From positions 47,947,063-48,011,062 of the forward strand of contig NC_068999.1 of the NCBI RefSeq assembly GCF_001194135.2: 64,000 nucleotides of DNA, read 5' to 3'. The position numbers and the translations under genes were made by a program. Every line of letters begins with the position of its first letter. Positions within the stretch are counted from its first letter, which is position 1. The DNA comes from Octopus bimaculoides (lineage: Eukaryota). The notes under the pieces are model-generated. The model was not told the origin of the DNA. It worked only from the letters and a program-made list of their open reading frames with translations, and searched no databases. Shown one piece after another: positions 22,543 to 63,695 of this stretch.

Positions 22543-25500
22543 TCACATATACGATGGGCTTCTTCTAGTTTCCATTTACCAAATCCACTCACAAGGCTTT
22601 GGTCAGCTCGAGGTTATAGTGGAAGACACTTGCCCAAGGTGCCAAACAATAGGACTGAACCCGGGACCATGTGGTTGGGAAGCAAGCTTCTTACCACATA
22701 GCCACTCCTGATGATAATATTTTATCTTTTTCTGATGTCATAACTTGCCTCAAGATCCTGTGCACCCACAAATGAAACACAAAGTAGCAAGAGACTAGAC
22801 GTAAGCAAAACAAAAGACAAACACACACACGCACACATTCACATAATACAAAAATGCATGTATGTATAACAGAGATCCTTTTGTCTATTTAGAAATGCAT
22901 AATCTTCTCTTTATATTTTTAAGGAAACTGAAAGTTATGATGAAAAACCAGATCAATATTGGTCAAAACAGAAAAAGCAATGCATGCGACAGAGAAGATA
23001 TACACATTTAACAAATAAAACACATGGTAAATTGTACTTAAATATTATATTTTTGACCAGATATAATGATTTTGTTACTAAATGTTCTTAAAACTTCTTT
23101 CTTTTTATTCATTTTGGAATGTGCAACATTATCAGAGATAATGTGATAATATAGGTGCTTTTATACCCATGCTGGTGCCATGTAAAAAATACCCACTACA
23201 CTCTTGGAGTGGTTGGCATTAGGAAGGGCATCCAGCTGAAGAAACTATGCCAAATCAGATTGGAATCTGGTGGAGTCCCCCAGCTTACCAGTTTTCAGTC
23301 AAACCATCCAACCCATGCCAGCACTGGAAAAAGGGATGTTAATTGATGACGACAATGACGATGACGCAGAAAATTGAAAGTGTACTTAGAGAAAAAAATA
23401 TACCTTTTTGTAAATGTATGTCAACATGATAGAGGCACAAAGAAAATAACTAGAAAATTGTCTCATTTTTTTTTACTTCTTTCACTCATTAGACTGCAGC
23501 CATGCTGGGTCATTACCTTCAAAAGTTTTAGTCAAATAAATCGGCCCCTGTTCTAATATATTTCTTAAGCCTGGTACTTGTTCTGTTGTTCTCTTTTGCT
23601 GAACTGCTTAGTTACCAGGACATAAACAGGTGTATAGGCACAAAAACAGTCATAAAGACCTACACAAACACTTATATACAACAGGCTTCTTTTAGTTTCC
23701 ATCTACCAAATCCACTCACAAGTCTCCATGAGCCCTAGGCTTTGTGCTAGGAAAATAAGAGGTAGAGAGGAGTGGGGTTTGAGAGAACGGACCAGAAGGG
23801 AACAGGTTTCGTGCCATGGAGGAGTCACATGATTGCTCACATTTTAGAAAAGAGGGTTGGAAGATGAAGCTGGAAAGTGATATAAATGGAAATGAGGTAC
23901 CAGAGTGAACCTTTAAGGTACAAAGGTGGATAGGAATGAGTGGATCTGGAGTGCCATGTATGGGTTGGTGAAGTAGCGGATGTCAGCAGAGTAGAAAGAA
24001 TGATACAATAAACAGTAGGATGGAAAAGAGATGACATGCTGGTGGAGAGGTTGCAGGTATGGATGGGGAAACAAGAGAGGCTGGCACAGTGTATAAAGAA
24101 CACCAACTGGACAGAGATCTTTGTACATTATTGATATCATAGTTTTGTAGTATATCCTTATATCATTTATTATATTATTGGATTATGTCTTTGCAGATCA
24201 AATAAAAGAAGGTGAATGTAACCTTCAGCTGATCCTTCAAACAATGAAAGAAGATAACTCCAATAGCTTTATATATCTAAGTCCAGCAGTTCCAAAATCA
24301 TCTGTTTTTTATCATTACTACAATCTCAAGTAGGTACAAAACTCTTTTCCTCAAACTGAGATTTATAGTCGATTACTTGACACCGCTAGCATATCGTTAA
24401 TACAAACATATATTACAAGAGTGGAGGGTCAAATGTTAAAGCTAATTAACCCATTACCTACCAGTGATCTCATATGAGATCACTTAGAAATTACAAATTT
24501 CGTAATTATTTGTCAATATTTACAAATATCTAACCTTTTTGCTATTTCTACTAGATATATTTCTCTGATATTCAAATGAGGTTTGCTAATTTTTCACCTA
24601 ATATCTCGCTTATTTCTATTTAAAATGTTATTTTGATCATTCCAGTNNNNNNNNNNAATATCTCGCTTATTTCTATTTAAAATGTTATTTTGATCATTCC
24701 AGTGTGTTTCTAAGGCTGTTTTATGCTAGAAATCAAAGTTTCATAAAAAAAATTCCGGTTAATAGAATTATGGGAGGTAATGGGTTAAGCAAACATTTCC
24801 ATTGAGAAGTGGAAATGTCTACACATTTACCAACCAAATTATTATCATCACTTAACGTCCATTTTCCACCAACTCTTTTTCTGCTTTTTCATACTTGCAT
24901 GGCTCGGGCATAGGTTGATTATAGTCAATAGCAATATCTAATGTTTCTTGATCCTTATCCTCTCTACAAAACAATTTTACACATAACAATGTTTTATTTT
25001 AATTTAACCTCTTAGAAATTCCCTAATGAATGTTTTGAATTATATTTCAGTATTCTGAACTATGATTCATATAGTAAGCATTGCTTAATATTATTAAACA
25101 TTTTTTTTTAGTCTCTAATATCTAACCTTCTTTTTTGAGTTCAAATTCCACCAAGGCCGACTTTACCTTTCATCCTTTTAGGGTCCATAAAATAAGTACC
25201 AGTTGAAGACTGGGGTTGATGTAATCGATTTATCCCCTCCTTTGAAATTGCTGGCCTTGTGCCAAAATCGGAAATCAATATTACTTAACATTTAAAAAAA
25301 TATAACTTTTATTACATTATGATTGAATTTATATATTTTTTTTACTTGGTATAAGAATAAACACTATCACCTGTCCAACAGTAGTGGTCCTACTGAATTA
25401 GAAGATTGAACCTTGAGAGCCAAGAAAATGTGTGTGTGTGTGTGCATGCAAAAGTATGGCAGCTGATTGAAAATATAGTGTGAAAAATATCAATTTATTT

Positions 25501-27477: not shown

Positions 27478-27853
27478 NNNNNNNNNNNNNNNNNNNNNNN
27501 NNNNNNNNNNNNNNNNNNNNNNNNNNNNNNNNNNNNNNNNNNNNNNNNNNNNNNNNNNNNNNNNNNNNNNNNNNNNNNNNNNNNNNNNNNNNNNNNNNNN
27601 NNNNNNNNNNNNNNNNNNNNNNNNNNNNNNNNNNNNNNNNNNNNNNNNNNNNNNNNNNNNNNNNNNNNNNNNNNNNNNNNNNNNNNNNNNNNNNNNNNNN
27701 NNNNNNNNNNNNNNNNNNNNNNNNNNNNNNNNNNNNNNNNNNNNNNNNNNNNNNNNNNNNNNNNNNNNNNNNNNNNNNNNNNNNNNNNNNNNNNNNNNNN
27801 NNNNNNNNNNNNNNNNNNNNNNNNNNNNNNNNNNNNNNNNNNNNNNNNNNNNN

Positions 27854-32642: not shown

Positions 32643-35600
32643 GTTATTATTATTATTATTATATGAAATTAAATTTTGAAAGTTAATTTTATTTTATTTT
32701 GCAATATTTTTTTCAGGCCAATTATAAATGGAAAATTTGAAGAGAAAACTTGTGGAGAAGGTCCCAGTTTATCAACGATGTTTGAGGAAGATAAATACTT
32801 ACATCAACTTGTAATTAATATTCAGGTACATAACAAAATAGTTCCTATAATAGTGGATAATTATTTTCAGTCAATTCATTATTCTTGGTTGAAGTCTGAT
32901 AGCTTCCTTTCTTGCTTAGAGTCTTCTGTCCAAAGAGGTTTTTAAACCAATATTTACACATCATCATCATCATCATCATCATCATCTTTTTACGTTCATT
33001 TTCCATGTTGGTATGGGTTAGATGGTTTGACTGGAACTGACAAGGCCAGGCCTGCACCAGGTCCCATAGTCTGTTTTGATTTGGTTTCTACCAGCTGGAT
33101 GCCCTTCCAATGACAACCACTTTACAAATTGTATTGAGTGCTTTTTACATGACACCATCATCAGTGCTTTTTATGTGGCACCATCACCAGTGCTAAAGCT
33201 TTATTTGCTTCAATATCCACCGTTCCAAAAAAAGAATTATTTTATTTTCTCTTTAAGTTTATAAATTCTTAAGTCATCTGCAACATACAATTCTTGTTGG
33301 TAAGAATAAATTTGAAGGAAAACTTTGGTCCAGTGATAGAACATCTTTCATGCCTACAGATGTGGGTTCAAGTTCCATGAGTAGCCTTTCACTTTTTCTA
33401 TTGAAAGGGTTTTTTTTTTTAACCCAATATTTACACACTATTAAGGCGGCGACCTGGCAGAAATGTCAGCACACCAGGCGAAATGCTTAGTGGTATTTCG
33501 TTTGTCTTTATGTTCTGAGTTCAAATTCTACCAAGGTCGACTTTGCCTTTTATCCTTTCAGAGGTCAATAAATTAAGTACCAGTTGCATACTGGGGTTGA
33601 TCTAATCGACTGGCTCCACCTCCCCCAAAATTTCGGGGCTTGTGCCTAGAGTAGAAAAGAATATTTACACACTATTCTTTATAGCTTTACCTGCTTTGAA
33701 TACTAGTTTGAAATATGGATTATTTTATGTCAACATTTGCATAAAATTTTAATTTGTATTTGCAATGTTATGATTTTTTCTTCTTTTAGGACACTTTAAC
33801 ATTTGCTTTTAACGCTGCTAACCAATATAGCAATGACTTTACTCCTTTTCTGCAATTTTACCAAGAAAATGAAAAATTTGATTCTGATAAACTTCAAGAA
33901 GAAAGTGATTGTAAGTTTCTTCAAACATTAATACATTTTTAGTTTTCCTAGTTAAGTAATGGCAAAACAAAAGTGATTTTTCTGTTACTTTAATTTGTAA
34001 ATCTAATTTTAAGGAGCAAATGTTCTCTGCTTTTATTCTGAAAAAAATCTGTTAAGAAAGATAAATGAGACAGCAATCACAAAATTATTATTTAATGATT
34101 GTAGTATTTATATGTGTAATCATTAGCATGCTGGGCGAGATGCTTAGCGGCATTTTGCCTGTCTCTACATTTTTTAGTTCAAATTTTACTGAGGTTGACT
34201 TTGCTTGTCATCCTTTCAAAATCAATAAAATAAGTACCAGTTGAGCACTGGGGTCGATTTAATCAGTTTTACCCTCTCCTGCAAAAAAATCTGCTGGCTT
34301 TGACCCAAAATTTGAAACCAATATTTATGTGTGTGAAGGTGGTGAGCTGGCACAAATGTTAACATGCCAAGCGAAATGCTTAGCGGTATTTCGTCTGGCA
34401 TTAAAACGGTGGTGGTGGTGGTGATGGTGGTGGTGGCGATAATGTTGGTGGTGGTAATGGGGGGGGGGTTAATGGTGGTGGGTGAGTGTGGAGGAGGAGA
34501 ATGAGGAGGATGATTCTTAATAACATTGTATCAAGAATCCTCCTTTGCAAACTGCTTTGAAGAAATATATTACACTAAATATTGCGTTTATGTATTTGCT
34601 TTGCAAGATTCTTGATGTGAGATTGTGTGTTGAAACAGATATTGTTATACTTGGAGATGGTCATCTTTTGCCAATTAAACACACACATACTATATATTTG
34701 GCCTTCACTTCAGTTTTATTAGCATTACATTTTCTGTAATTCATTTGTCTGTCAAAGGTCTTTCATCACACATTCTGTGACCTCTTCAGTAGCTCTTTGT
34801 CCCATGTGTCTCCTCTTGTCCTGCCTATTCCATTTTGTTCTTCAAATAAATAGTGCCTGTGTTTCATTGTTTAGAGATGACCCTCCCCAAGTACAACAAT
34901 ATTATTAAATATGATTTGTATGAATCTTTCAGTTTTGTCCTATTCTAGTATAAATATAACAGTGATCAATATGAATTGTTATTTATTTCTTTGTCTGGAT
35001 TAGTGGATGTCCAGTTCTTTTCAGAATCCCTAAAGCATTACCATATGCAACATAAAATGGCAGGAAACATTCAGAAACAGCGTCAGCTTGGTTTACTTTT
35101 AATTGATGCAACTAAGATGAAACAGCTTTTCATTCCTTCTCCAATACGCTGTTTAAATGTAAGCTATATTGTATTTTTTTTTTTTTTTTTTTTTTNNNNN
35201 NNNNNNNNNNNNNNNNNNNNNNNNNNNNNNNNNNNNNNNNNNNNNTTTTTTTTAGAGTGGTGAGCTGGTAGAACCATTAGCATGCTGGGAAAACTGTTTA
35301 GCATTATTTTGTTCATCTTCACATTCTGAGTTCAAATTCTACAGGAGTTGACTTTATCTTTTATCCTTTTGGGGTCGATAAAATAAGTACCAGTTGAACA
35401 CTGGAGTTGATGTAATCAACTTAAAACTCCCCCAAAACTGTTGGCCAGGGAGATTCAACATGACACATAGTGTGACAAGGCTGGACATTTGAAATACAGG
35501 TATTACTCATTTTTGCCAGCTGAGTGGACTGGAGCAATGAGAAATAAAGTGACTTGCTCAAGGTCACAACATGCCACCAGGAATCAAACTCTCAAACTCA

Positions 35601-44219: not shown

Positions 44220-47200
44220 TGTGTGTGTGTGTGTGTAAATCTGCATGTGTGTATGTATGAGTTTTTTTAATGTCAGTACCCCAGCTTGGCCACAGCCTCA
44301 GCCTGAAACTGATAATAGAATAAGAATTATTGGATTAATTTGTTTAGTTTGTAGATTCTTACAATGAAACACCTAAGTGATTGCTTTAAAGAAATTAACA
44401 TTCCTAATAATATATTTTAAGATAAGCATGATCTTCAATCGTTGGGCCCCATGGAGGCAATGACAAGTGATTGAAACTTTTGGTGATATTCTGTACTTGA
44501 GAAGACTTGTCAAGCTAAGTGAAACTGTTGTGGCTGATGTTAGTGTCACATGACTGACAGCCATGAAAGCACCCATTACCCTCTTGGAGTAGTCAAAGTT
44601 AAGAAGGGCATCCAGCCATAGAAACTGTGCTAAACCAGACTGGAATCTGGTGTAGCTCTTTAGATTGCCAATTCCAGTCAAATCGTCTAACCCAGCATGG
44701 AAAGTAGATGCTAAATGACGATGATGATGATAATGGTGACGATGATGACGACGACGATGATGATGATGATGATCTAAACAATGTTTCAATTATTGTAAAA
44801 GAATATGTTTTCTTTTATGATTCTGTATTTTATTTAGGATGAATGGTTACTCTGTCAGAGAAGTTGGCTATATTTGGAAAGCGTCTTTAATGCAGCAGAC
44901 ATACAGCGGCAGTTGCCATCTGAGGATCGTATGTTCCGACAAGTAGATAAATCATATAAAGACATAATGAGAAAGGTTCAAAAAGTTCCTCTTGCAATGA
45001 GAGCTGTTACACAACCTGGTAAGAAGGCATTGGTTTTATCTAATAAGAAATAATTTAATACAATTGCAGCAGGCAAGGCATATATTAGTCATTGAAAAAC
45101 AAACAAAAATTATTATCTTCGCTTAAACAGTTATTATTTAATGTGAAAATTTATAATGGTAAATGTTTAAGTCAAGTTAACAATTTTTGTGTGTTTTCAA
45201 AGGAAAATCTTCTATCTTCCATGCAGCACACAAAACAAAGATGGAATTATTTTTCATGTTAATTCAAATAACACTGGAAAGCATTGAAATAAAGAGACAA
45301 AAGCAAACAAATTTATCCAACAACCCAGTAGTCAGCTGCTGTCTCTGGTTGTCATGCCTTACATAGCATAAAAATCATTTTTGGAGGGAGGCAAAACAAG
45401 CAGATGTAGACATGTACTGGGTCAAAGCTGTGCAGGTAAATTATTGCATGGATAGGGTCTGAAAAGACAGAATGGTTCAATTAAATAATCCATGCTGAAG
45501 TAAATTGTTATATAAAGAAACAGGAAATTTTAAGCTCCATACTTTTTGGTTATTTATTGTATTACCATTATTTAAAAATATTTCTCTGTTCCAGGGTTAC
45601 TAGAAACTTTTCAAATGAACAATTCTTTTCTGGATGCAATTCACAAATGTTTAGAGACTTATCTAGAGTCCAAACGGATGGTGTTTCCAAGGTCAGTTTG
45701 TATTAATGATTTAGTTCCTGAAAAAGAATATTAAATTGTGTTGTGTCTGGGGAGAGTCATTCTCTTTTGGTGCCTTATAATTTAACACACTCACCAGTAA
45801 AATTTCCACTTATTTCTTTTTTTTTTAAAGATTGCAAGATGCAACGAAAATTTTAGGAAAATAAAAAAGAAAGAAGTGGAAATTTTACTGGTGCTAATTC
45901 TATCATAATTTTTCAAAAATTCTTTCAGATTTTACTTTTTGTCCAATGATGAACTGCTTGAAATCTTGTCTCAAACCAAAAATGTTCAAGCTGTACAACG
46001 GCATCTGCTGAAATGCTTCAATGCAAAGCTTGAATTTAAAGAAATTGCACAGTCAGAAAATGCAGATGAACTGGGTTGGTATATTTGTGTTTATTCATTG
46101 ACATTATTTGGTCAAAGATAATGTCCAAAAATTTACTTTTGATTGGTAGAGTTATTTTTTTTTTTGTGTGCTACTCTTTAAGTCGCCTTTAACTTTCTTC
46201 ATATTAAAGACTTGGGTTCCAAATAAGGGATCCCAATCAGAAGCAACATGCTGCCATTGGATACTTGACAAAAGAAAGGTGCAGTCTGTCCAATATCTAT
46301 AGAGGGTTGTTTACATAGATGACAGCATTGACAAGAATAATGAGTACAGGTGGATGAAGAAGTTTAAAGATAGAGGAACCAGCATTGCAGTAGAAGACCA
46401 TCAGCTGTGACCACTGACACAAATCACCAGCAAGTAGATGTCTTGATTTACATGGACAGAAGAGTCATGATCCATGAGATTTTTGTGCAACTGAATTGTG
46501 ATCACAGTGCATTCCAGAAGATAATCGAAGACGACTCTGGGTATCAGAAAGTGTTTGCAAATTGGGTATCTTGGTAGTTGGTGCCTGATTTGCAGGAGTG
46601 AAGTGGGGGACTTTGCTCTGATCTGCTGGAAACATTTGAAGCTAATGAGAAATCTTCAGATTTTTCAATATGCTAGGCCACTGGTTTTAAATTGATACTA
46701 ATCAAATTAATATTCAATTTTTCATCCTTATTATTTAAATTTATATATGTGCGGGTGACACATAAAAGCACCCACTATACTCTCTGAGTGGTTGGCGTTA
46801 GGAAGGGCATCCAGCTGTAGAAACTCTGCCAAATTAGATTGGAGCCTGGTGTAGCCATCCGGTTGCACCAGTCCTCAGTCAAATCGTCCAACCCATGCTA
46901 GCATGGAAAGCGGATGTTAAACGATGATGATGATGATGATGATATAATCGTCCAGCCCATGCTAGCATGGAAAGCGGACGTTAAACAACGATGATGATAT
47001 ATATATATATATATANNNNNNNNNNNNNNNNNNNNNNNNNNNNNNNNTGTATATATATATATATTTATATATTTGTGTGTTTTTGTCCACCCCCCACTAT
47101 TGCTTGACTACTGATGTTGGTATGTTTACATGCCTGTAACTTAGCAGTCTGGCAAACAAGACCGACAGAATAAGTACTAGGCTTACAAAGAATAAATCCT

Positions 47201-50200: not shown

Positions 50201-53104
50201 AGAACTTGTGAGCGGTGGCTTGGACAAACTAGCACGTTCTACCTTATGTGCATTAATAACTATAGAAGTCCATGCTCGTGACATTGTTTCTAATTTGATT
50301 GAAAAAGATGTAAGTCAAAATATATTACTACATTATATGTACAGAGATATAAATGTAATGTTTGTGATTTGTTTTACTGTTTTGCATTCATATTTCATGG
50401 AGAAGTTTACTAAGCAATTGTTTCTATAGCCATGTGTTCATCTGGCCTGTGTTTGTCATCCAGGCAAATTGGAGAAAAAATTTTGAGTGTCACAACACTT
50501 ATAATTATATATAACTTATAACTCTTATAAGATTCCATAATCCTAAGTTTATCTTTGTTATTTAATCAAAGAAGAAAGAGTAGCTTCCAAGACTTCTGCA
50601 GGCTTTACCAGAATGGTTGGTTCAACGTAAAATTTTGTTGATTGATGACAGTAAAGACAACATAGATAGGAAGTAATTGTAGAAAGCCGGATTTGTTGGG
50701 AAGTGGGGATTAAACAAAGTATTATGGGAAATAAGAAGCAGTTGAGATGTTGAGAGAAGAGGCGTATGCATAGGGTGAGCTTAGGTAACTTTTTAGTTGA
50801 AAGAAGTAGAAGCTATTGAGGAAGAGAGGGAAAGGAAAGTTCTAGCAGAAATCTAAAACTTCCTTCTTCCAAAAAACTCCTTGTATTATCAGTTCATGCT
50901 TTCATTGCAATTTACAAATTAAAATGTTCAAATTCAAAAGTATTTTGTTATGGAGTAAATGATACAATAAAAGTGGATATAAAGAAATTTCACAGATTTA
51001 TGGCAAGAATAATTGATGTTTTAAACAGTTTCATATATGCTATAGTGACTTGAAATGTTATTTTGTTATTTTTTTTATATATATAATTATATTTTTTAGA
51101 TCTCAAATTGTCATAGCTTTGAATGGCAGAAACAGCTGCGATATTACTGGGAAGTTGAACAAGACACATGTGTTGTTCACATGTGTAACTCAAACTACAT
51201 CTATGGCTATGAATACCTTGGAGCATCTTCTCGACTTGTTATAACACCATTGACAGTAAGTCACCCATAGCATCACAACTACCAAAAATATTAGCTTACC
51301 TCCTCCTCCTCCTCCTCCACCATCATTTAGTTGCAAGTTAAGTGACTAGAGGTGCTTGCTTAATTTACAAGTGCTTTGCCAGCATGGAAAGCAGACGTTA
51401 AACGAACGATATATCAGTTGAATGCTCTATGCTATTGATTGGAGTAGGAAGTTCAGTATGTCTTCTCTGAACAGAAGTCAACAAACTGAAACAGTCCATC
51501 AGCTTCCTCATGTTAGCATTGCTAACATTTTATGTATCATCTCCTCCATGCAGGATGTCCCAATCTTCCCTAACAGTCTTCATATCCTCCATCCGAAATT
51601 CAGTGTCTTCCACAAGTTGATTGATATAGCTTTTCTAAGTCTGATGATACCTGTATGTCCATGAATGTGTTTCCAGAGAAGTGGGTTGCTGGATATTTCG
51701 TCCTTGCTTCTCTAGTAGTTTCCTGAATAACATGCTCTTCTTTGTTCTTCTTCCTCTGATAACTGAGATGATGGTAGGAAGATTACCAAGAAAGACTGTA
51801 AACAACATCCTGATGCATTTATCATGAAGTTTCTTTTCGGGTCTCTTGATTTGTATTCATGCTGAAAAGTTAAAGCCAAATGCTAACTCAATGGCTGCCT
51901 TGATGACTGTCAAGCTTGCATGACTATCCCACTCCCAATTTCCCTTCACTGATCTATGTGTCCAAGCTTGGATTACTCTCTACATCATCCTGTGTGTAAG
52001 GTACCACCACCACCACCACCTTTCCCTCCCCCTTCATTCGTGCCAATAAACAACTCACATTCCCTCAAAGTGATGGTTGAGTGAAACAATCTTTCCAGTG
52101 CTGGCCTCACAAAATGCAACCAATACACCCTCTAAAATGGCTAGCAAATTGAGCAGAGACAGCCTAAGGGTCTGAGGTCCCTTTATTCAACATCTCTGGT
52201 GTTAGTGGACCAAAAAACACTCTCAGAACAGTTTATGAAGTGGTTGCTAATAGGCAGGGTATCCAACTATAGAAACCAGCCCAAATGACACATGTGAGCA
52301 TCAGTCAATGGAAGCATCATCTCCCAACTGGAGACAACACAGACCATGACAACTCATCCAACACATACCAGCATGGGAAGCATAAAAATGATGATATATA
52401 TGCAGCCTGCTTCCAACGATATAGTTCCAGGTTCAGTCCTTTCAACTGTAATTCTCATTCTTTAGAGTTAATCATTGAAATTTATATGAGAATTTTTCTT
52501 GAGAAATTCTTTAAATTACTGAATTTCTCTTTTTTTTTTTTTTAGGATCGCTGTTACATATGCTTGATGGGAGCAGTTCAACTAGATTTGGGTGGAGCAC
52601 CTTTGGGACCAGCTGGGACAGGGAAAACTGAAACAACAAAGGATTTAGCTAAATCTTTAGCAAAACAATGTGTTGTTTTCAACTGCTCAGATGGACTGGA
52701 TTATAAGGTAAGCTTCAGCTGTTTCTTATTTCTGTGAAAATATTCTTTTCTACTCTAGGAACAAAAGCCCCCAAATATTTCAGATATAAAAGATAGAGAA
52801 ATTAATCAACCAACACAATGACCCTTCCAGACATAAACCTTTCTTTTCAGAGTAAAAGGTGATTAGAATAATACATTTTAGCTTTTACTTGTCTCAGCCA
52901 TTGCACTGTGGCCATATTGGAGCACCGCCTTGAAAGATTTGAAGCTGAAGAAATCAAACCCAGTACTTATTTTTGAAGTTTGGTACTTATTCTATTGATA
53001 TCTTTTACTGAACTGCTTAGTTATGGTAATGTAAACAAACCAACACTGGTTGTCAAGCAGTTGGGTGAGGGACAAACACACATACATTCACACACACACA
53101 CACA

Positions 53105-53139
<35 letters not shown>

Positions 53140-56100
53140 TCACACTCACAGAGGCTCCATGCAATTTCTGTCTAGTAAGTTCACTCACAAAGCATTGGTT
53201 GGCCCAGGACTATACTAAAAGACACTTGCCTCGAGTGCCACACAGTGGGATTGAACCTGGAATCACATGGTGACAAAGCAATTGTCTTAAATACACACCC
53301 ATGCCTGCAAAGTTATTTCATTTGTATAAGGATTTAAATTTGCATGTTTACGAGTAATGACAAACAAATATCTTTGGTTTTACTTTACAGTTGATGGGAC
53401 GATTTTTTTCTGGTCTGGCACAATCAGGAGTATGGTGCTGCTTTGATGAATTCAATAGAATAAACATTGAGGTACTATCTGTAATTGCTCAACAGTTGGT
53501 GACCATTAAAAATGCTAAATCTGAAAAAGTAAGTTAAATTTATGTATTTGTTTTGCAAGATTCTTGTTGTGAAATCGTGTGTTGAAACAAATATTGTTAT
53601 ACTTGGGGATCATCATATTTTGCCAATTAAATGCACACAGTGTTTTTAATTGTTGTTTCTCTCATGCTGGTGATGTTGGGTAGCACTGCCTGGTTGTAGT
53701 TTGACAGGCTGTCTATCAACATTCTGCCAGGCTTGTCTGAGGGGAAACACACAACTTTCCTATTCTTCATGCATTGACTGAGTTTGTGCAGGCTGCATGC
53801 ATGTGTTTAATTGGCAAAATTTGACCATATCTAAGTATAATAATATAAGTTAAATTTAACCTAATCATCATCATCATCGTTTAACATCTGCTTTCCATGC
53901 TGACATGGGTTGGATGGTTTGACTAGAGGTCTGGAGAGCCAGAGGCTGCACCAGGCAGAATCTAGATCTGGCAAAGTTTCTACAGTTGGATACCCTTCCT
54001 AATGCCAACCACTCCGAGAGTGTTGTGGGTGCTTTTATGTGCCACTGGCACAAGGGTCAGTCAGGCAGTTCTGGCAACAACCATGCTCAAAAGATGTTTT
54101 TTACGTGCTACCTGCATGGGAGCCAGTCCAGCGGCACTGGCAATGACCATGCTTGAATGTTGTTTTTCCTGTGCCACCGGCACATGTGCCGGTAGGGCGA
54201 CTCTGGCAATGATCACACTCAAATGGTGCTTTTTACATGTCACTAGCAAGGGATCCAATCTGTGGCCCTGGCAACGATCATGATCAGATGTGCTTTTAAC
54301 GTTCCACTGAATGATATATGGAAGAAAGTTGACCCTTTAGCATTTAATCCAGCCCAAATATTCTACCAGTTTTATGTTAAAACTGACCAGATCCAACCCC
54401 TCATACCTACCCTACAATGTCATTCTAAAAATGAGCAATCATATTATTGAAATCTTAAAGCCATTTTCAAGACTTCTTTTTTTAATTTCTCTGTAGTTGT
54501 CAAGATTCATGTTCGAAGGTCGTGAAATAAAACTGGTTGCTTCCTGTGCTACATTTATAACAATGAACCCAGATTACGCAGGACGAACTGAACTGCCTGA
54601 TAATCTAAAAGCACTTTTCAGACCAATTTCAATGATGGTTCCAGATTATTGTAAGTAGAATACAAGTGTGTGACTAAAATATGCAAAACTTACATCGATG
54701 GGGTTAAAAGGAAGCTTTTGCTATTATCTTTTATCTGTTACTTGTTTCAGTCATAGGACAAATGGAGGCACGTGGCTTTGTGGTTAGGGTGTTAGACTCA
54801 TGATTGTATGATTGTAGTTTCAATTTCTGGAACAGGTGATGTATTGTGTTCTTGAACAAAACACTCCATTTCATGTTGGTTCAGTCCACTCAGCTGGTGA
54901 AAATGAGAAATCATGTGAGGGACCAGTGTCCCATCCAGTGGGGGATGTATATGTAAGAGAAACCAGAAAAATAGCCCTGTGAGTTTATATGAAATGGGAA
55001 AGAGCTTTATATTATTATATTATTAGCTTTGAGATTTCAATGCTGTGGTTGTTTATTTTTAGAATGACATTGTAGGATAGGTTTGAGAGGCCATATCTGG
55101 CCAATTTGATCATAAAACAGGTAAACTATTTGAACCAGATATGGCTGATTTAAATGCTAAAAAGTTCCTCCCATGGGATATATTACTGGTAGAAGACTAA
55201 TGATTTTTCTTGATGATGTCAGGTCCCTCACAGAGATCAGAGAATTGCTAAGGTATCTGAAAAGATAGAGTAGTTTATAGTAGAATAATTTCTTCTTAGC
55301 TTTTGTGATGTTAGAGTGGTAACTTTTTAAAACAAAATTGTCAGAAGGAAGAGGTTTACCCTTGGTTTTTACAAGTCTTCAAAAGTAATAAGACTGTTCT
55401 CATTAACTTTTCTTTGGAACCGATGCAAGTCAATGGCTGCTAGAACAATATGCACAAAGGGGAAATTCCTGACTATCATGTATTCTAAGGAGGAAGAGCT
55501 AGAGGTAGTAGTTAGTGCACATCACTGGGTCAAAGGTTGCTGTGTTTTTTTTTTTATATGTGGTCTAGAATATCTGAATGTTTGTAAGCAGCAGAAGTAC
55601 CTTCCCAGGTGTGGGAGAAAAATACATTACTGTTTGTTTTTCCTGAGCTTTGTTATTCAGATGAGTGAACAGAGACATCAGATTCCTGAACATTTCCTAA
55701 ATTTGAATTCTTGTTCTTAATCATTCAATCAAGATGCTATTGTTTCTTTTTAAAATTTACATTTTAATTTAGGTTTGATTGCTGAAGTGATCTTATACTC
55801 CGAAGGCTTCCTGTCATCAAAAATATTAGCCCAAAAGATTACCCAAATGTACAAGTTATGCAGTGAACAGTTATCACAACAAGATCATTATGACTTTGGG
55901 ATGCGGGCAATAAAATCTGTTCTAGTCATGGCTGGTTCTTCCAAGCGACAAAATACAGAACAAAATGAAAATTTACTTTTAATAAGATCACTAAGAGACA
56001 GCAACTTACCAAAATTTCTAAAAGAAGATGCAGATCTCTTTCAGGTATTTTTATAATAATCTTGTGTTTTCTTTGTCTTAGATAAATCTCTTCTTTATAT

Positions 56101-58206
56101 TGTTGCATAGGAAAATCCCTTTGGGTGGAAAATGACATTACCTTTCCTGCACGTGTCTGAAAATGTTGTGCTAGTAGGCCATGTCAGTTCCCAGATGTGT
56201 AGTGCATGCTTATTAGATTTTTGTCTTCATGCAAGATGAGTGAATGCATCAAGCAGAGACCATAAACCCATGTCTCATCACCAGTGATGATAATCTTCAC
56301 GAAGTCTCGGTCATGGTTTGCACAGTCCAGCATGTCCTGGGTGATTTCCATGCAGAATTGCTTCTGCTGTTCTACCAGCCACACCTCAGGGACAGATTTT
56401 GCCTACATTCTCCACATGCACAGATCTTCTGTTAAAATGGAATGCACTGATCCTGTGCTTATTCCCACTTCATGAGCAATCTCCTGGACTCCATGACTAT
56501 TTACCAAACTTTCTCAATCAGCTCCTCATTTCGGCTTGCAGATGGTATGCCTGAGTGCACCTCACTCTCCACTGAGATGCAGCCATGTTTGAAGATGTTG
56601 TGCCATTCCTTGATCTGAGTTTTGCCCATGGCATCATTCCCAAAAGCCTGCTGAATCTTTTGGGTGATTTGAACTTGAGTATCACCAAGCTTTTGGCAAA
56701 ACTTGATGCAATTTCTATTCTTGATGTGTTCAGTGAAAACGAAAATCCAATGAGTGTGCACTACACAGCCTACCAGTGCAAAAGTTTTCACACAGGTGCA
56801 AGAAAGGTGGCGTCACCTCCCACCTAAAGGATCTTACCTACACAGCAAACTGTATATCTCTCTTGGTATATGTGGTTACTTAAATTTATAGAAACTCATA
56901 CACAGCTAATTATAACTCTAATACTTCATCCCTTAAATCTGTCTACTCCAACTTGTCTCCTACTCCTCCAGTTCATCTTCTTCTTCTTCTTCTTCTTCTT
57001 CTTCTGCTTCATCTGCTTCTTCTGCTTCTCCTCCTCTTCCTCCTCCTTTTTCCTCCTTTCCTTCTTTTCTCCTCTCCCATCCTCCTCTTCTCTTTCTCCT
57101 CCTCCTTCTTCTTCTCCTCCTCCCCTTCTCCTCCTTCTCCTCCTTCCTCTGCTGACAGTTTTAAGGTTTTAATTTACACCCATTTAACTGTTTAATTATT
57201 ACTTAAAAGTAATAAGCTTTTCTATTTTAAACCCCCTAAACATTCATTTAGGTTGATAAAACTGTTCAAACTTATTTGAATCTCCTTAAAACAGGATTTG
57301 ACTTGATTTTAAGAACTTAAGTAACTCTATGAGTGTGTGTGCATGTAATTTACACAAAGCAGATATTCTTAATTCTTTGAATGACAAATTTTTACCAAAC
57401 AAATATTCTTTTTGCCTTAAACATATTCTTTTAATGTCAAATGATTAGGCTATTCTCCAAGACTTATTCCCTGGGAATGAAGTTCCTGCAAACGACTATG
57501 GAAATTTTGAATCAGAAATTCTGAATGTAATGAAAGAAAACAACCTTGAACCTGTCAATGCCATGGTGAAAAAAGTGATTGAATTATATGAAACTATGTT
57601 GGTACGGCATGGTGTTATGCTGATTGGTCCAACAGGTGGTGGCAAGACAACAATATATCAGGTATTTCGTCTGTTGGTATTTTGTTCTGAGTTCAAATTC
57701 CACAGAGGTCGATTTTACCTTTCATCCTTTTGGGGTCGATTAACCCTTTCGTTACCAACCCAGCTGAAACCGGCTCTGGCTCGGAGTACAAATGTCTTGT
57801 TTTCATAAGTTTTGAATTAAAATCTTCCACCAAACCTTAGTCACAATTTATGTTCCTAACACTAGCTGAATGATAACGAAGTTATTTTACTAAATTCTTT
57901 GTTATATTTAAAGTAATTGAAAGAAACACAGAGCATCTCAAAATAAATACAGTAACGAAAGGGTTAAATAAGTACCAGTTACACACTGGAGTTGATGTAA
58001 TCGACTTAATCCCTTTGTTTGTCCTTGTTTGTCCCCTCTATGTTTAGCCCCTGTGGGCAATGAAGAAATAAATATATCAGGTAAGAAATGTAGTAATAGT
58101 AACCATATCTTACGTGTGTAGATACCATGGAACCTGATGCAGCTCTTCAGCTCATCAGCTACAGTCAAACCATCTAACCCATGCCAACAAGGAGAGCAGA
58201 TGTTAA

Positions 58207-58256
<50 letters not shown>

Positions 58257-61200
58257 ATATGAAATGTTAAAGGCCAGATCTAGCTGGTTTGAACATAAAA
58301 CAAGTAGAATAATTGGGCCAGATATGGCTAGTTTAAATGCTAAAGGGTTAAAATCTTAAATTTTATAGCATATTCTATATTTGTATATCTTACTTAGCAT
58401 GTATATACTAACAGGAAGCCACAATGTTGTGGCATTTCTCTTCTGAGGGCATCTCATGCAGGCATAGAGTGCTAAAGAGCCAGTACTGGATTTTTTTTTT
58501 TTTTGCCTGGTACCAATATTTCTTGGTTTATTGACACTATACATTTATACAAGGTATATACCACTGCATAGTGGCTTTCTGTTAGTATATCCATGTTAAG
58601 TAAGATATTCAAATTGCTTCTAGGTACTAATACTGCTTCCATTGATAATAAAGAATTTTCCATTTGTTTTAGATTTTGAAAGATGTTTTAACAAATCTAC
58701 ACACATCTGAAGAAGCAAATAGTTTTTACAGACCTGTTTTTTGTTTCATCTTAAATCCTAAATCTCTTGACATTGAAGAATTATATGGAGGAATAAATAA
58801 AGTAACCATGGAATGGCACGATGGTCTTTTAGCACTGGCTGTAAGAGCTGCATGTAATGTAAGTTGTATCTTTATCTTTTACTTGTTTCAGTCATTGGAC
58901 TGTGGCCATGCTGGGGCACCACCTTGAAGGGTTTTAGTTGAACAAATCAATCCCAGTATATCTTTTATCTTTTACTTGTTTCGGTCATTGGACTCTGGCC
59001 AAGCTGGGGCACTGTCTTGAAGGGTTTAGTCAAACAAATCATCCCCAGAGCTTATTTCTTGTAAAACCCTGCTAAAACAGGCGGCGAAGCATGGTGCTGT
59101 CTTCTACCTAGATAACTCCTGTCAAACCATCCAACCCATGCCAGCATGGAAGGCAGATGCTGATGACAATGATGATTATGATGATGATGATGATGATGAT
59201 GATGAATCATTATGTTTATCAAATTTGATTTGAAATGTAATTATTTTTAATAGGACACCAGTGACAATCACCAGTGGGTAATATGTGATGGTCCAGTCGA
59301 TGCATTGTGGATTGAGAACATGAATACAGTTTTGGATGACAATAAGATGTTATGTCTTGCCAACAGTGAAAGAATCCAACTAACTCCCTACATACACATG
59401 ATGTTTGAAGTTCAAGACTTAGCAGCAGCTTCTCCCGCTACAGTCAGCCGGTAAAACATTTACCTTTTAAATCATCATCATCATCATCATCATCGTTTAA
59501 CGTCCGCTTTCCATGCTAGCATGGGTTGGACGATGAAAGATATATTTGCTTCTAACAGTAACTTACTCTTTAATAAACCATTAAATCAATTTAAATATAT
59601 TTGCAACATACCTAACCTGTAAACAAAGGCCATTTTCTCCCTGTTCTATGTTCAAAGCGGTTAGTTTGAACATAGAAATTTAATCATCAAATCACAATGA
59701 CATTAAAACAAGATTTAATTTTATTCTAGATGTGGAATGGTGTATATTGATACTGAACAGCTGAAATGGATGCCATATGTTAAGAAATGGGTTAAAATTT
59801 GGAGTTCGAAGTTGCTTGATGAAAATGCTGAGTATTTATTTGATTTGTTTGAAAAATATATTGAGAAGGGGCTTCAATTCATCAACAAATGTCAACACAC
59901 TATGCAACAGGTAATAACAGACTTCTAATCTCAGAGTACTATTATACTGAAATGTAAAAATTAATTAATGAATGTAACTAATATGTAGTGTGAATAACCA
60001 GAAAAGTTAGAAATACATGTATTTCTTTGATATTGTATCTGGTTTGCAAGATTGTGCATGGAAATATTAAAACCCTGACTTCTGGCAACTGACTTATTAG
60101 ATGGCCACAAGATTATCCACCATCTTTCAAACAACAACCTTGGACACTGTTTTTAATTTCATATGTCTTACGCTCACAGACATGATTACAAAATCGAAAA
60201 GCAACACAGCACCCATGACTTTTGGAAACATTTTTTTCACACTCAGAATTGCTGAAGCATGAAATAAACTATCTGCATCTCTTGTTAGCTGTTGAGACAC
60301 TACATCTTTCAGAATTTCCATGCTTCCTGAAATTCACCACCAGTACATCTGACCCCACCACCACCACCACCACCACCAATTTATTTTAAATACTCATTCA
60401 GTGATCTTAAACTTTTTTCTCGAAACAGATTTTGTTGTATCTCAGATGGGTCATTATGCCAATTATAAGCACTCACACAATCTGGATTTCACTTATTTAT
60501 TATCTATTTGTCAATTGGTTAACTATTTAACTAATTAACTAATTGATTGATCATTTGGTTAATCAACCAATCAATCAGTTTGGTTTATGAAAGTCCTTTT
60601 GTTGCCATTCATAACCACATCAATGACATGCCCTCTAATTATTGGCATAATGGCCCTCCCAAGATACATCATAAATATAAACACATTTTTTAATTATCTA
60701 AGAAATTCCCACTTTTATGTGGTCAGGCAGAATCATTACAGCATCAGAGAGAAGGCATTGTGATATTTATTATGAGATAATCTTTGCAAAGTACTAACAT
60801 TCTAGATAGTGATAAAAACCATTTTAGTTTTCTATAAGAAATTTAAGGTTCTTAACAATCACAGGCTCTTTCTCTCTTTATTAACAAACTCACCATCCAA
60901 ACAGCAAATAAAGTCTCTATCAGAAAATAAAACCTCGAGAATATATATCCCATCATCCAGACTAACTGGATCCTGGAAAATATGATATGAAGCATAAATT
61001 TAATGATTTTATTATAACTCACCTACAGTTCGCCTATCAGTGTCAAGCAGTGCTTAACACTGCTTGGCACTGATACTGTTGAATTTCTTCTAACCTGGCA
61101 GTCTAATAGCACAACTCAGTCAATGTTGTTGACTGTGTTTTAGTTAAAGCTATGGTTTTAAAATCTGCCCAGAGTTACCTCTCTTTGGCGTTTCTCATTG

Positions 61201-62744: not shown

Positions 62745-63111
62745 GTAAGTTTTTCATATTGTCATTAAAAACAATTAGTGAAAATATTTATATAGATATA
62801 AATAACTGCAATGATGAAACCTGGTTCGAGAAACGATGAATAGGTTTGAGGCAGGGACCTGTTTGCTAATAAGCAAGTCAAACTGTGTGACTCCACATTT
62901 TGAATGGTGCTTATGATCTTGAGATGAAGGACTTAAGATTGAACACTAGTGAGTAGATCCTATTGGTGGAGTCTCACATCAATTTTGGGGTCATCAAAAG
63001 GAAAGCCCCAAAATGGTGTGCATTCTCTCCTGATGACCCCTGAAAGCTCCTGGCATCTGGTATGCTTTTGATTCACAGCACTTGCACAAGTGAGTTGCTT
63101 GCAAATTTCTT

Positions 63112-63342
63112 ATTTCATTATTGCCCACAAGGGGCTAAACATAGAGGGGACAAACAAGGACAGACAAAGGGATTAAGTCGATTACATCGACCCCAGTGTG
63201 TAACTGGTACTTAATTTATTGACCCCGAAAGGGTGATAGGTAAAGTTGACCTCGGCGGAATTTGAACTCAGAACATATCGGTAGATGAAATACCTCTAAG
63301 CATTTCGCCCGGCGTGCTAACATTTCTGCCAGCTCACCGCCT
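63112..63342 (-). mobile_element. Full-length young SINE (family B) with perfect 17-bp TSD
   Basis: TSD TTGCTTGCAAATTTCTT at 63095-63111 and 63343-63359. Another full copy at 33443-33659 has TSD AATATTTACACACTATT. Confidence 0.9.
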
Positions 63343-63695
63343 TTGCTTGCAAATTTCTTTCAGTCTTTGATATAAGCATACATAAATATGAAGCTAATTA
63401 AAAATCCTACCGTTTATTTAAAAACAACCAAAGATAAATTCAGTTGTCCTGTTGGCCATAATACATTGCGAGCAGTAATTTATTCCTATGCTTTTTGTGA
63501 CACAGGTCCAGGCATGACTGTGTGGTAAGAAGTCTGCTTCCCAGCCACTTAATTCTAGGTTCAGTCCCACTGCGTGACACCTTGGGTAGGTGTCTTCTAC
63601 TATAGTCCCTGGCCAACCAAAGCCTTATGAATGGATTTGGTAGATGGAAACTGAAAGAAGCTCATCATATTTATATATATATATATATATGTATG

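What the first reader, a model, noticed from the sequence alone, without database searches (positions are those of the whole stretch)
57652..58090. A SINE landed on a splice donor: its TSD duplicated the exon end and created a competing poison donor
Seen: a perfect 13-bp TSD AATATATCAGGTA at 57652-57664 and 58071-58083 spans the exon 35/intron junction. The proximal copy now reads CAG|GTATTT (positions +4 onward come from the truncated SINE). The distal copy keeps the stronger, presumably ancestral CAG|GTAAGA 419 nt downstream. Use of the distal donor would add 419 nt, with an in-frame TAA at 57806-57808, truncating the motor after the AAA2 P-loop (an NMD target). Inference: the gene depends on a TE-rebuilt weaker donor, and donor choice could act as a TE-born expression switch.
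Basis: partly seen in the sequence, partly recalled or inferred. Interest (0 to 1): 0.75.

Follow-up and report, generated by a model that had tools for sequence, protein, structure and literature searches.

The report
SINE insertion duplicated a dynein splice donor
A short retroposon landed on the exon/intron border of a mollusc axonemal dynein (DNAH6) gene and duplicated the splice donor, so the gene must now splice from a rebuilt upstream copy; this is a real and tidy but fairly ordinary transposon accident, and nothing here shows it acts as a switch.

Summary
AATATATCAGGTA occurs exactly twice in the window (57652-57664 and 58071-58083). The two copies flank a 406-bp insert at the 3' end of the DNAH6 exon that carries the AAA2 P-loop.

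Only the junction 57661|58673 gives a protein that aligns without gaps to solved DNAH6. The distal donor would add 419 nt, with a first in-frame TAA at 57806.

Corrections:
- The insert is composite. A 5'-truncated SINE (182 nt) is split by a 220-bp piggyBac-like MITE with TTAA duplications. The TAA lies in the MITE.
- The SINE itself reads ...AGGTATTTCG... at the truncation point. The GT of the proximal donor is therefore microhomology, either TSD or SINE, and the unambiguous TSD is about 7-9 nt.
- The preceding exon natively uses the same CAG|GTATTT donor, so this donor type works in this gene.
- The SINE copy has about 4% private divergence and a later nested insertion, so it is old and tolerated.

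The distal (ancestral) donor is much stronger: U1 duplex -12.3 against -8.5 kcal/mol. A distant orthologue has GTAAGC at the same intron.

The origin model is supported. The "poison donor / expression switch" idea is untested and, in my judgement, unlikely to be more than a minor leak. This is a new member of a known kind; the closest analogue is the canine merle SINE.

The parts
57449..57661 (+). DNAH6 exon encoding the end of AAA1 and the AAA2 P-loop (…[12 protein letters not shown]); it ends in phase 0 at CAG
   Evidence: Translation. The spliced model aligns without gaps to DNAH6 9fqr_Xz residues 1400-1944.
57652..57664 (+). Proximal copy of the 13-nt direct repeat AATATATCAGGTA (last 10 nt of the exon plus GTA)
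57662..57667 (+). Proximal (rebuilt) splice donor GTATTT. +1..+3 could be TSD or SINE; +4..+6 are SINE.
   Evidence: It is the only donor that joins in frame to 58673. The SINE consensus reads (A)GGTATTTCG. U1 duplex -8.5 kcal/mol.
57665..57743 (+). 5' part of the sense-oriented, 5'-truncated SINE. About 50 nt of the head is missing. A B-box-like GAGTTCAAATTCC is present.
   Evidence: It matches about 17 other copies in the window.
57740..57743 (.). TTAA, left target-site duplication of the nested MITE (native SINE sequence)
   Evidence: The uninterrupted SINE copy at 5716-5856 reads GGGGTCGATTAAATAAGTACC straight through.
57744..57963 (.). Nested 220-bp piggyBac-like MITE with perfect 12-nt terminal inverted repeats CCCTTTCGTTAC / GTAACGAAAGGG
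   Evidence: Inverted repeat I1 is 16/16 including TTAA. This interior has no match in other SINE copies.
57806..57808 (+). First in-frame stop (TAA) of the read-through from the exon; it lies inside the nested MITE
57964..57967 (.). TTAA, right target-site duplication of the nested MITE
57968..58070 (+). 3' part of the SINE, ending …GAAGAAATA(A)
   Evidence: 88-93% identical to the 3' halves of the copies at 5716-5823 and 63111-63216.
58026..58047 (+). SINE-borne pyrimidine tract plus TAG (TGTTTGTCCCCTCTATGTTTAG|), an acceptor-like site 33 nt upstream of the ancestral donor
   Evidence: Scan of the insert: 80% pyrimidine. Function is not tested.
58071..58083 (+). Distal copy of the 13-nt direct repeat
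58081..58086 (+). Distal splice donor GTAAGA, the ancestral context, now 419 nt inside the intron
   Evidence: U1 duplex -12.3 kcal/mol, second best of 34 sites. Gene-own PWM 11.9 bits, 97th percentile.
58673..58858 (+). Next DNAH6 exon ([10 protein letters not shown]…AACN); the acceptor AG is at 58671-58672
56045..56050 (+). Internal control: the native donor of the preceding exon, TTTCAG|GTATTTTTA, the same CAG|GTATTT 9-mer as the rebuilt donor
   Evidence: Junction 56044|57449 is verified by the gapless DNAH6 alignment. There is no TE or TSD at this site.
63095..63359 (-). Reference full-length copy of the same SINE subfamily (63112-63342), flanked by a 17-nt TSD (63095-63111 and 63343-63359). 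It defines both element ends.

Best explanation
A sense-oriented, 5'-truncated SINE retroposed into an AT-rich target (AATAT…) that spanned the last 10 nt of a DNAH6 exon and the first 3 nt of its ancient phase-0 intron. The insertion was presumably made by a LINE machinery through target-primed reverse transcription.

The staggered cut duplicated the exon end. The truncated cDNA joined where the SINE's own internal …AGGTATTTCG… matched the target's …CAG|GTA…. The upstream junction therefore reads CAG|GTATTT, a complete donor of a type this gene already uses one exon upstream.

That rebuilt donor is now the working one. It removes the SINE, a piggyBac-like MITE that later landed at a TTAA inside the SINE, the second repeat copy with the ancestral CAG|GTAAGA, and the rest of the old intron as one 1011-nt intron (57662-58672).

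The ancestral donor survives as a strong but stranded site inside the intron. At most it gives a minor out-of-frame product: +419 nt with a stop at 57806, or a 33-nt SINE-derived exon with a stop.

Shown: the structure, the origin, the empty-site sequence, which junction gives DNAH6, and the relative donor strengths. Inferred: predominant use of the proximal site, and near-neutrality.
For: - Exact 13-nt repeat, unique in the window.
- The insert's two outer parts match about 17 dispersed copies of one repeat family on both strands.
- A full-length copy of the same subfamily has a 17-nt TSD and the same 3' end. Other copies have 17- and 19-nt TSDs, and 3 of 4 TSDs start with AATAT.
- The SINE consensus contains (A)GGTATTTCG exactly at the truncation point.
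- The nested element has 12-nt perfect TIRs and a TTAA duplication, and an intact SINE copy reads straight through a single TTAA.
- A nine-exon spliced model using 57661|58673 aligns 545/545 without gaps to DNAH6.
- The preceding exon's verified donor is the same CAG|GTATTT.
- The focal SINE has 6/139 private substitutions, similar to its two relatives, plus a secondary insertion, so it is not a fresh mutation.
- The neighbouring exons are all open.
- Distal use would make a 632-nt exon, against 138-272 nt for the verified exons.
- A distant orthologue has CAG|GTAAGC at the same intron, and the intron position is shared by many animals.
Against: - No RNA evidence could be obtained. The protein collection holds no transcript-derived sequence from this or a close species.
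- The distal donor is clearly stronger: -12.3 against -8.5 kcal/mol, and 11.9 against 4.8 bits on a PWM built from the gene's own donors. It also lies nearer the acceptor, which in simple competition assays favours it.
- The distal donor has not decayed. With about 4% divergence, however, zero changes in 26 nt has a probability of about 0.3, so this carries no information.
- Fixation is not shown; the insertion could be polymorphic.
- The tRNA origin of the SINE head was not confirmed by ARAGORN or Rfam.
Confidence: 0.7

Rival explanations
1. One reading: the two donors really compete. A substantial and possibly regulated share of transcripts uses the distal donor, gains a premature stop and is degraded, so the transposon created an expression switch (alternative splicing coupled to NMD) for DNAH6.
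For: The distal donor ranks second of 34 sites by U1 pairing and at the 97th percentile by the gene's own PWM. The proximal donor is at the 9th percentile by PWM. The stop at 57806 lies far upstream of later junctions. The canine merle allele shows that a SINE at a splice junction can set up graded splice-site choice (PMC7349775).
Against: There are no expression data. The identical GTATTT donor works constitutively one exon upstream. Distal use needs a 632-nt exon, more than twice any verified exon here. Nothing suggests regulation: no conserved elements could be tested, and the predicted RNA structure is not unusual (z = -0.86). A structural motor subunit is an unlikely target for such a switch.
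Confidence: 0.15
2. The insertion is a loss-of-function or strongly hypomorphic allele. It could be polymorphic, or the gene could be decaying. On this reading the stronger distal donor dominates and the sequenced haplotype makes little functional DNAH6.
For: The strength difference between the donors. Fixation is unproven. No filled or empty allele could be retrieved from other individuals.
Against: Nine consecutive exons around the site are intact and 545/545 colinear with DNAH6. The SINE carries about 4% private changes and a later nested MITE, which implies long persistence. Long persistence is unlikely for a null allele of an axonemal dynein.
Confidence: 0.08
3. Two-step (recursive, stwintron-like) removal. 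The unit 57662-58080 is itself bounded by GT…AG, and its excision would regenerate exactly the ancestral CAG|GTAAGA donor, which would then splice to 58673.
For: The geometry follows from the duplicated CAG|GTA. Related principles are known for introners that co-opt TSDs as splice sites and for stwintrons (PMC11282704; PMC12403724).
Against: The 20 nt before the AG at 58079-58080 (58059-58078) are AATGAAGAAATAAATATATC, my count from the sequence: 30% pyrimidine. The site did not reach the 70% cut-off in the acceptor scan, so it is a poor 3' splice site. The direct route from the proximal donor gives the same mRNA.
Confidence: 0.05
4. The repeat is a chance match or an assembly artefact, and there is no insertion event.
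For: The repeat is AT-rich and short. The assembly has gaps elsewhere in the window.
Against: The probability per position is 6e-8. The repeat abuts the family-defined 3' end of a SINE and a truncation point that shows microhomology. No gap lies within 10 kb of the site. Other copies of the family have equivalent TSDs.
Confidence: 0.02

Closest known systems
Canine merle allele: a tRNA-derived SINE at the PMEL intron 10/exon 11 boundary (PMC7349775)
   Same: A SINE inserted exactly on an exon/intron boundary. Its 13-15-bp target-site duplication contains the original splice site, so an original site and a TE-associated site lie in tandem and splice-site choice decides whether normal protein is made.
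   Different: Merle affects the acceptor, in antisense orientation. Choice there is tuned by the poly(A/T) tail length and has been shown experimentally to matter for phenotype. Here the donor is affected, the SINE is in sense orientation with no homopolymer tail, the functional site is the TE-rebuilt copy rather than the original, and no RNA or phenotype data exist.
Disease-type and evolutionary SINE/Alu insertions near splice sites that cause cryptic-site use or exonization (general knowledge; summarised in PMC7349775)
   Same: An intronic or junctional SINE brings or repositions splice-like motifs. Here these are the donor-like AGGTATTT in the SINE body and a pyrimidine tract plus TAG in its 3' part.
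   Different: Most described cases weaken or bypass the native site. Here the native site is duplicated intact and moved 419 nt into the intron.
Introner elements / transposon-derived introns that co-opt the TSD as a splice site (PMC11282704, PMC9860276)
   Same: One splice signal comes from the element and one from the duplicated target. The inserted unit plus one TSD is bounded by GT…AG, and its removal restores the pre-insertion sequence exactly.
   Different: Introners are multi-copy DNA transposons that create new introns inside exons. This is a single retroposon that enlarged an ancient intron. Its own 3' AG lacks a pyrimidine tract, and no new intron position is created.
[D1,2] stwintrons and recursive splice sites (PMC12403724; recursive splicing from general knowledge)
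   Same: It is formally possible that an internal excision regenerates a functional 5' donor.
   Different: The internal 3' splice site is poor, nested splicing is not needed because the outer donor can act directly, and there is no evidence of two-step splicing.
Microhomology-mediated 5' junctions of truncated LINE-driven insertions (general knowledge of L1/Alu 5'-truncation junctions)
   Same: 4-5 nt (A)GGTA are shared between the target and the element at the truncated 5' junction. The TSD length and AT-rich target are typical.
   Different: Here the microhomology happens to be the splice-donor core, which is why a working donor was rebuilt.

Membership tests
SINE (non-autonomous non-LTR retroposon) insertion | Many dispersed copies of a short (<500 bp) non-coding element on both strands | tested here: met
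   About 17 further copies in 64 kb, 72-95% identical.
SINE (non-autonomous non-LTR retroposon) insertion | Variable-length target-site duplications that directly flank the element ends | tested here: met
   Focal copy 13 nt (7-13 once ambiguity is allowed for); other copies 17, 17 and 19 nt.
SINE (non-autonomous non-LTR retroposon) insertion | 5' truncation with an intact 3' end | tested here: met
   The focal copy lacks about 50 nt of the head present in the 231-nt copy at 63112-63342, and the 3' ends coincide.
SINE (non-autonomous non-LTR retroposon) insertion | Small-RNA (tRNA) derived head with Pol III A and B boxes | tested here: inconclusive
   A B-box-like GAGTTCAAATTCC and a tRNA-like head are visible in full copies. 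ARAGORN found no tRNA in the window and Rfam found nothing at 57400-58700.
SINE (non-autonomous non-LTR retroposon) insertion | 3' tail shared with a partner LINE | not tested
   Two 3'-tail variants are seen among the copies. No LINE partner was sought.
piggyBac-type MITE (the nested element) | TTAA target-site duplication | tested here: met
   TTAA at 57740-57743 and 57964-57967. Intact SINE copies have a single TTAA/TAAA there.
piggyBac-type MITE (the nested element) | Terminal inverted repeats starting CCC…/…GGG, short length and no coding capacity | tested here: met
   12-nt perfect TIR CCCTTTCGTTAC/GTAACGAAAGGG in a 220-bp element. That piggyBac TIRs start with CCC is from memory.
piggyBac-type MITE (the nested element) | Multiple copies, or relation to an autonomous piggyBac transposon | tested here: not met
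   No second copy in the window; the TIR search allowing 3 mismatches finds only a chance-level match. Genome-wide copies could not be searched.
Alternative 5' splice sites coupled to NMD ('poison' donor switch) | Two usable donors in tandem, one of which gives a premature stop upstream of later junctions | tested here: met
   Sequence level only: donors at 57662 and 58081; +419 nt shifts the frame, with TAA at 57806.
Alternative 5' splice sites coupled to NMD ('poison' donor switch) | Both junctions observed in RNA, with the unproductive isoform stabilised when NMD is blocked | not testable with these tools
   No transcript data. The protein collection holds no spliced product of this or a close species.
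Alternative 5' splice sites coupled to NMD ('poison' donor switch) | Arrangement conserved or regulated (tissue-specific use, conserved flanking elements) | tested here: inconclusive
   The contig of the closest relative (93% identity) stops 500 bp short of the site. The distant orthologue has a single GTAAGC donor.
Merle-type SINE-at-splice-junction allele | SINE inserted on an exon/intron boundary with a TSD that contains the original splice site | tested here: met
   compared with PMC7349775.
Merle-type SINE-at-splice-junction allele | A demonstrated shift of splicing to the alternative site with a phenotypic effect | not testable with these tools
   There are no RNA or phenotype data.
Introner / transposon-derived intron | The element plus one TSD is excised as an intron using its own GT…AG with a competent 3' splice site | tested here: not met
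   GT at 57662 and AG at 58080 exist. Only 30% of the 20 nt before that AG (58059-58078) are pyrimidines (my count from the sequence), and the site is absent from the acceptor scan at the 70% cut-off.
DNAH6 (axonemal inner-arm dynein heavy chain 6) orthologue, the host gene | Best and colinear match to DNAH6 rather than to other dynein heavy chains, with AAA1-AAA3 P-loops in order | tested here: met
   DNAH6 chains score 945-951 bits against at most 717 bits for other heavy chains, with 545/545 gapless alignment.

The most novel reading that the evidence does not exclude
The duplicated donor pair is used as a real alternative 5' splice-site pair, or the SINE's acceptor-like site plus the stranded ancestral donor form a 33-nt poison exon. 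A retroposon's target-site duplication would then have created, in one step, an NMD-coupled throttle on an axonemal dynein. That would be a donor-side counterpart of the canine merle mechanism, kept over evolutionary time in a mollusc.
Probability: 0.12. Interest if true: 0.55.

Novelty: new member of a known kind. Interest (0 to 1): 0.3.

Why it matters
If the proximal donor is used constitutively, the locus is a clean natural example of how a gene survives a direct transposon hit on a splice site. The duplication made by insertion, plus microhomology with the element, rebuilds a serviceable donor in one step, and the intron simply grows. That helps in thinking about intron growth, about why TE-rich genomes such as this one tolerate insertions at exon borders, and about gene-model pitfalls, because an annotation pipeline that prefers the stronger GTAAGA would truncate DNAH6. 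If the distal site is used appreciably, it would be a donor-side analogue of the merle allele and a case of TE-born unproductive splicing. In either case it is a single-locus anecdote, not a new principle.

Tried and rejected
1. Rfam scan of 57400-58700 and ARAGORN on the whole window found nothing. The tRNA origin of the SINE head therefore rests only on a visible B-box-like motif.

2. Exact look-ups of the window's own ORFs, namely the exon read-through with the SINE and the next-exon ORF, are not on record. No second individual or assembly of this species could be examined for a filled or empty site.

3. The closest relative found (Logan SRR11869394/391, 93% identical over 58588-58914) has a 1119-bp contig that does not reach the insertion site, and its upstream 319 nt do not align to the window.

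4. The protein search with the spliced peptide returned no transcript-derived protein of this or a close species, so there is no indirect RNA evidence.

5. Organism identification through the neighbouring LPMO-like gene shows only that the best named relatives are gastropod and bivalve molluscs at 60% identity or less. No species or genus can be assigned. My impression that this is an octopod cephalopod is from memory of its SINE and microsatellite content and was not tested.

6. Folding 57640-58110 as RNA gave z = -0.86, with 16 of 100 shuffles folding as well. This gives no support for structural masking of either donor.

7. I asked whether the preceding exon's GTATTT donor is also TE-derived. 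It is not: no repeat or TSD lies there.

8. A recursive splice site at the distal CAG|GT was rejected because the acceptor context is purine- and A-rich (sequence; not listed in the scan).

9. MaxEntScan was not available. I substituted U1 duplex energies and a small PWM trained on this gene's own donors. About two thirds of the training sites were themselves chosen with a generic consensus, which biases the PWM towards consensus.

10. The third protein-database search and the representative-library search were left unused, because no query was likely to recover the site in a relative.
Full report
OBSERVATION. The 13-mer AATATATCAGGTA occurs at 57652-57664 and 58071-58083 and nowhere else in the window, even with one mismatch allowed. 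Identity ends at 13 nt on the left, where one copy has C and the other A. The probability of this 13-mer recurring at one fixed position, given the window's base composition, is 6e-8. The whole window holds only 22 exact, non-simple direct repeats of at least 13 nt spaced 100-1000 bp apart, and at least three of the others are target-site duplications of the same repeat family. The exon ends at CAG 57661. The proximal donor reads CAG|GTATTT and the distal donor reads CAG|GTAAGA at 58081, 419 nt downstream. The read-through frame stops first at TAA 57806-57808.

HOST GENE. Plus-strand ORFs from about 25.6 kb to the end of the window encode an axonemal dynein heavy chain. A concatenate of these ORFs matches DNAH6 structures best: 1586-1618 bits, against 887.5 bits or less for other heavy chains. 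I assembled nine exons (51100-51255, 52546-52707, 53391-53528, 54497-54650, 55773-56044, 57449-57661, 58673-58858, 59254-59450, 59730-59910). The 553-residue product aligns to DNAH6 chain 9fqr_Xz residues 1400-1944 over 545 positions without a single gap. This fixes the junctions exactly. In particular, 57661|58673 (…TTIYQ|ILKDV…) is the only junction that gives a colinear protein. GPAGTGKT (AAA1) lies at about 52.6 kb, GPTGGGKT (AAA2) at 57.63 kb and GDTGVGK (AAA3) at about 62.7 kb, so 'after the AAA2 P-loop' is right. The label 'exon 35' cannot be checked because the gene starts upstream of the stretch that could be aligned.

WHAT THE INSERT IS. The 406 bp between the repeats (57665-58070) are not one element. 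Positions 57665-57743 and 57964-58070 match about 17 other copies of a short interspersed repeat on both strands of the window. The 220 bp between them (57744-57963) match nothing else in the window. They carry perfect 12-nt terminal inverted repeats, CCCTTTCGTTAC and GTAACGAAAGGG, and are flanked by TTAA on both sides. An uninterrupted SINE copy (5716-5856, minus strand) reads GGGGTCGATTAAATAAGTACC straight through that point. A TTAA-duplicating, piggyBac-like MITE therefore inserted into the SINE after the SINE had inserted into the gene.

SINE ENDS AND THE TRUE TSD. A full-length copy of the same subfamily lies at 63112-63342 on the minus strand (231 nt). It is flanked by a 17-nt duplication (63095-63111 and 63343-63359) and ends …AATGAAAT(AA). 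The focal copy ends …GAAGAAATA(A) directly against the distal repeat. Other copies have 17-nt (33426/33660) and 19-nt (31727/31895) duplications, and three of the four duplications begin with AATAT, including the focal one. This is the signature of LINE-driven retroposition with a preferred AT-rich target.

The focal copy lacks about 50 nt of the head. At the truncation point the full copies read …GCTTAGAGGTATTTCATC… (63-kb copy), …AGCGGTATTTCGTCTG… (15.6-kb copy) and …AGTGGTATTTCGTTTG… (33.5-kb copy). GGTA, or AGGTA against the closest relative, is thus SINE sequence as well as target sequence. This is 4-5 nt of junctional microhomology, which from general knowledge of L1-type insertions is common at 5'-truncated junctions. 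Together with the ambiguous A at the 3' end, the unambiguous duplication is only about ATATATC(A). The '13-bp TSD' is its maximal reading. Nothing downstream depends on where the line is drawn, because the empty site reconstructs to …GGCAAGACAACAATATATCAG|GTAAGAAATGTAG… in every case. The ancestral donor was therefore CAG|GTAAGA. The rebuilt donor takes +4..+6 from the SINE and +1..+3 from either source.

INDEPENDENT SUPPORT FOR THE ANCESTRAL STATE. A genomic fragment from a more distant relative (Logan ERR14857104 and ERR12370320; 74% nucleotide identity in the exon) has the same intron position. It reads …ACAATTTATCAG|GTAAGCATC… with no SINE in the 115 nt of intron available. Genomic fragments from many other animals also break after …T(V/I/C)YQ followed by a V codon (GTN), so the intron is ancient. 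The evidence is weak because the orthologue is distant. The closest relative recovered (93% identity) has a contig that stops about 500 bp short of the site. The window's own ORFs are not on record elsewhere.

HOW STRONG ARE THE DONORS? Predicted pairing to the U1 5' end gives -8.5 kcal/mol for the proximal site and -12.3 for the distal site. The median of 33 donors of this gene is -7.5. By this measure the distal site ranks second of 34, and the proximal site ties for 11th-12th of the gene's 33 donors, about 70% of which pair no better. A PWM trained on the gene's other donors gives 4.8 bits for the proximal site (9th percentile) and 11.9 bits for the distal site (97th percentile). Only nine training sites are homology-verified; the rest were chosen with a generic consensus, which inflates the contrast. 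Both measures agree that the distal site is much the stronger. They disagree on whether the proximal site is average or weak.

The most useful fact is an internal control. The donor of the preceding exon, fixed by the gapless alignment, is TTTCAG|GTATTTTTA at 56045, the same CAG|GTATTT 9-mer. It is native, with no repeat or duplication there. Ten of the 33 donors lack G at +5. So GTATTT works as a donor in this gene.

WHICH DONOR IS USED? This could not be measured. The following points favour predominant proximal use:
- Nine consecutive exons around the site are intact.
- The focal SINE has 6/139 private substitutions, against 7 and 10 in its two closest relatives, and has since received a MITE. 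It is not a fresh lesion, and a null allele of an axonemal dynein should not persist that long.
- Distal use would create a 632-nt exon, against 138-272 nt for the verified exons. From general knowledge of exon definition this is disfavoured when the flanking introns are long.

The following points go the other way:
- The distal site is stronger and nearer the acceptor.
- It has not decayed. With about 4% divergence, however, the chance of no change in 26 nt is about one in three, so its intactness says nothing either way.

I put about 0.65-0.7 on predominant proximal use, 0.15 on appreciable or regulated competition, and under 0.1 on a hypomorphic allele.

OTHER SPLICING GEOMETRIES. First, the unit 57662-58080 is itself bounded by GT…AG, and its removal would regenerate CAG|GTAAGA. 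This is formally like recursive splicing, stwintrons, or introners that co-opt a TSD. However, the 20 nt before that AG are 30% pyrimidine (my count from the sequence; the site is not listed in the scan), so it is a poor acceptor. Second, the SINE's 3' part supplies TGTTTGTCCCCTCTATGTTTAG| (AG at 58046-58047, 80% pyrimidine), 33 nt before the stranded ancestral donor. That outlines a possible 33-nt exon (58048-58080) with an in-frame TAA at 58069-58071 (the stop is read off the sequence). Predicted RNA structure across the insert is unremarkable (z = -0.86).

COMPARISON WITH WHAT IS KNOWN. The closest described case is the canine merle allele. There a tRNA-derived SINE sits on the PMEL intron 10/exon 11 boundary, flanked by a 15-bp duplication that holds the original acceptor, and splice-site choice between the original and a SINE-borne site determines the phenotype (PMC7349775). 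The present locus is the donor-side, sense-orientation counterpart. Here the TE-rebuilt copy, not the original, has to be the productive site. Introner elements show the same principle of one signal from the element and one from the duplicated target (PMC11282704), but they are multi-copy DNA transposons that create new introns. This locus fails that family's test because its own 3' site is poor. It is a new example of a known kind of event, not a new mechanism.

ORGANISM. The neighbouring gene's best named relatives are gastropod and bivalve LPMO-like (PF03067) proteins at 60% identity or less, so the window is from a mollusc. No closer assignment was possible. My impression of an octopod cephalopod is from memory only. 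CORE-SINEs and other tRNA-derived SINEs are described for octopus (Ohshima and Okada 1994, as cited in PMC4824008), but I did not test membership in a named family.

VERDICT. The origin model is supported. The 'poison donor / expression switch' idea is speculative and in my judgement unlikely to be more than a minor leak. Interest is modest.

Noticed in passing
window 57744-57963: A 220-bp piggyBac-like MITE (perfect 12-nt TIRs CCCTTTCGTTAC/GTAACGAAAGGG, TTAA duplication) is nested in the SINE. It is the only copy in the window.
   Followed up: partly
window 56045-56050: The native donor of the preceding DNAH6 exon is CAG|GTATTT, identical to the rebuilt donor. Ten of 33 donors predicted in this gene lack G at +5 (GTAAAA three times, GTATTT twice, and GTAACT, GTAACA, GTAATA, GTACAT and GTTAAA once each).
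   Followed up: yes
window 58026-58080: The SINE 3' part provides a pyrimidine tract plus TAG (AG at 58046-58047) 33 nt before the stranded ancestral donor. This outlines a possible 33-nt exon with an in-frame TAA at 58069-58071.
   Followed up: partly
window 8251-8556, 10993-11451, 13463-13858 (+): ORFs of a second gene upstream of DNAH6. The middle ORF encodes a chitin-binding type-4 / LPMO-like domain (PF03067). Its best named relatives are gastropod and bivalve proteins at 60% identity or less.
   Followed up: partly
window 58110-58260: Just right of the distal repeat lies another repeat that ends in a (GAT)16 microsatellite. Its frame reads …[16 protein letters not shown]…, and similar peptides recur in ORFs at about 22.3, 23.3, 28.9, 40.5 and 59.1 kb, so this is a second abundant repeat family.
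   Followed up: no
window ~58386-58423 and ~58571-58608: A foldback-type inverted repeat sits in the same intron, with roughly 38-nt arms and a few mismatches (atatcttacttagcatgtatatactaacaggaagccac / gtggctttctgttagtatatccatgttaagtaagatat). Homology to the relative's contig L001 begins inside the right arm.
   Followed up: no
window 33426/33660, 31727/31895, 57652/58071, 63095/63343: Three of four clear target-site duplications of this SINE family start with AATAT, which suggests a preferred target or 3'-end annealing motif for the partner retrotransposon.
   Followed up: partly
window 5857-6820, 17926-18855, 24647-24656, 27478-27853, 35196-35245, 47016-47047: Runs of N (assembly gaps). Two of them cut SINE copies (5856 and 35245), so repeats break this assembly. 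None lies near the finding.
   Followed up: no
L003 620-953; proteins P0028-P0039: The intron after …T(V/I/C)YQ is shared by genomic fragments from many animals. Other fragments (P0026, P0034, P0045, P0050) read straight through …TVYTILADTL…, so they come from intron-less or transcript-derived copies.
   Followed up: no
window 46075: The only frame-compatible donor that fits the DNAH6 spacing at this exon is CTGG|GTTGGT, which has an unusual +3 T. This junction was not verified by a gapless alignment.
   Followed up: no
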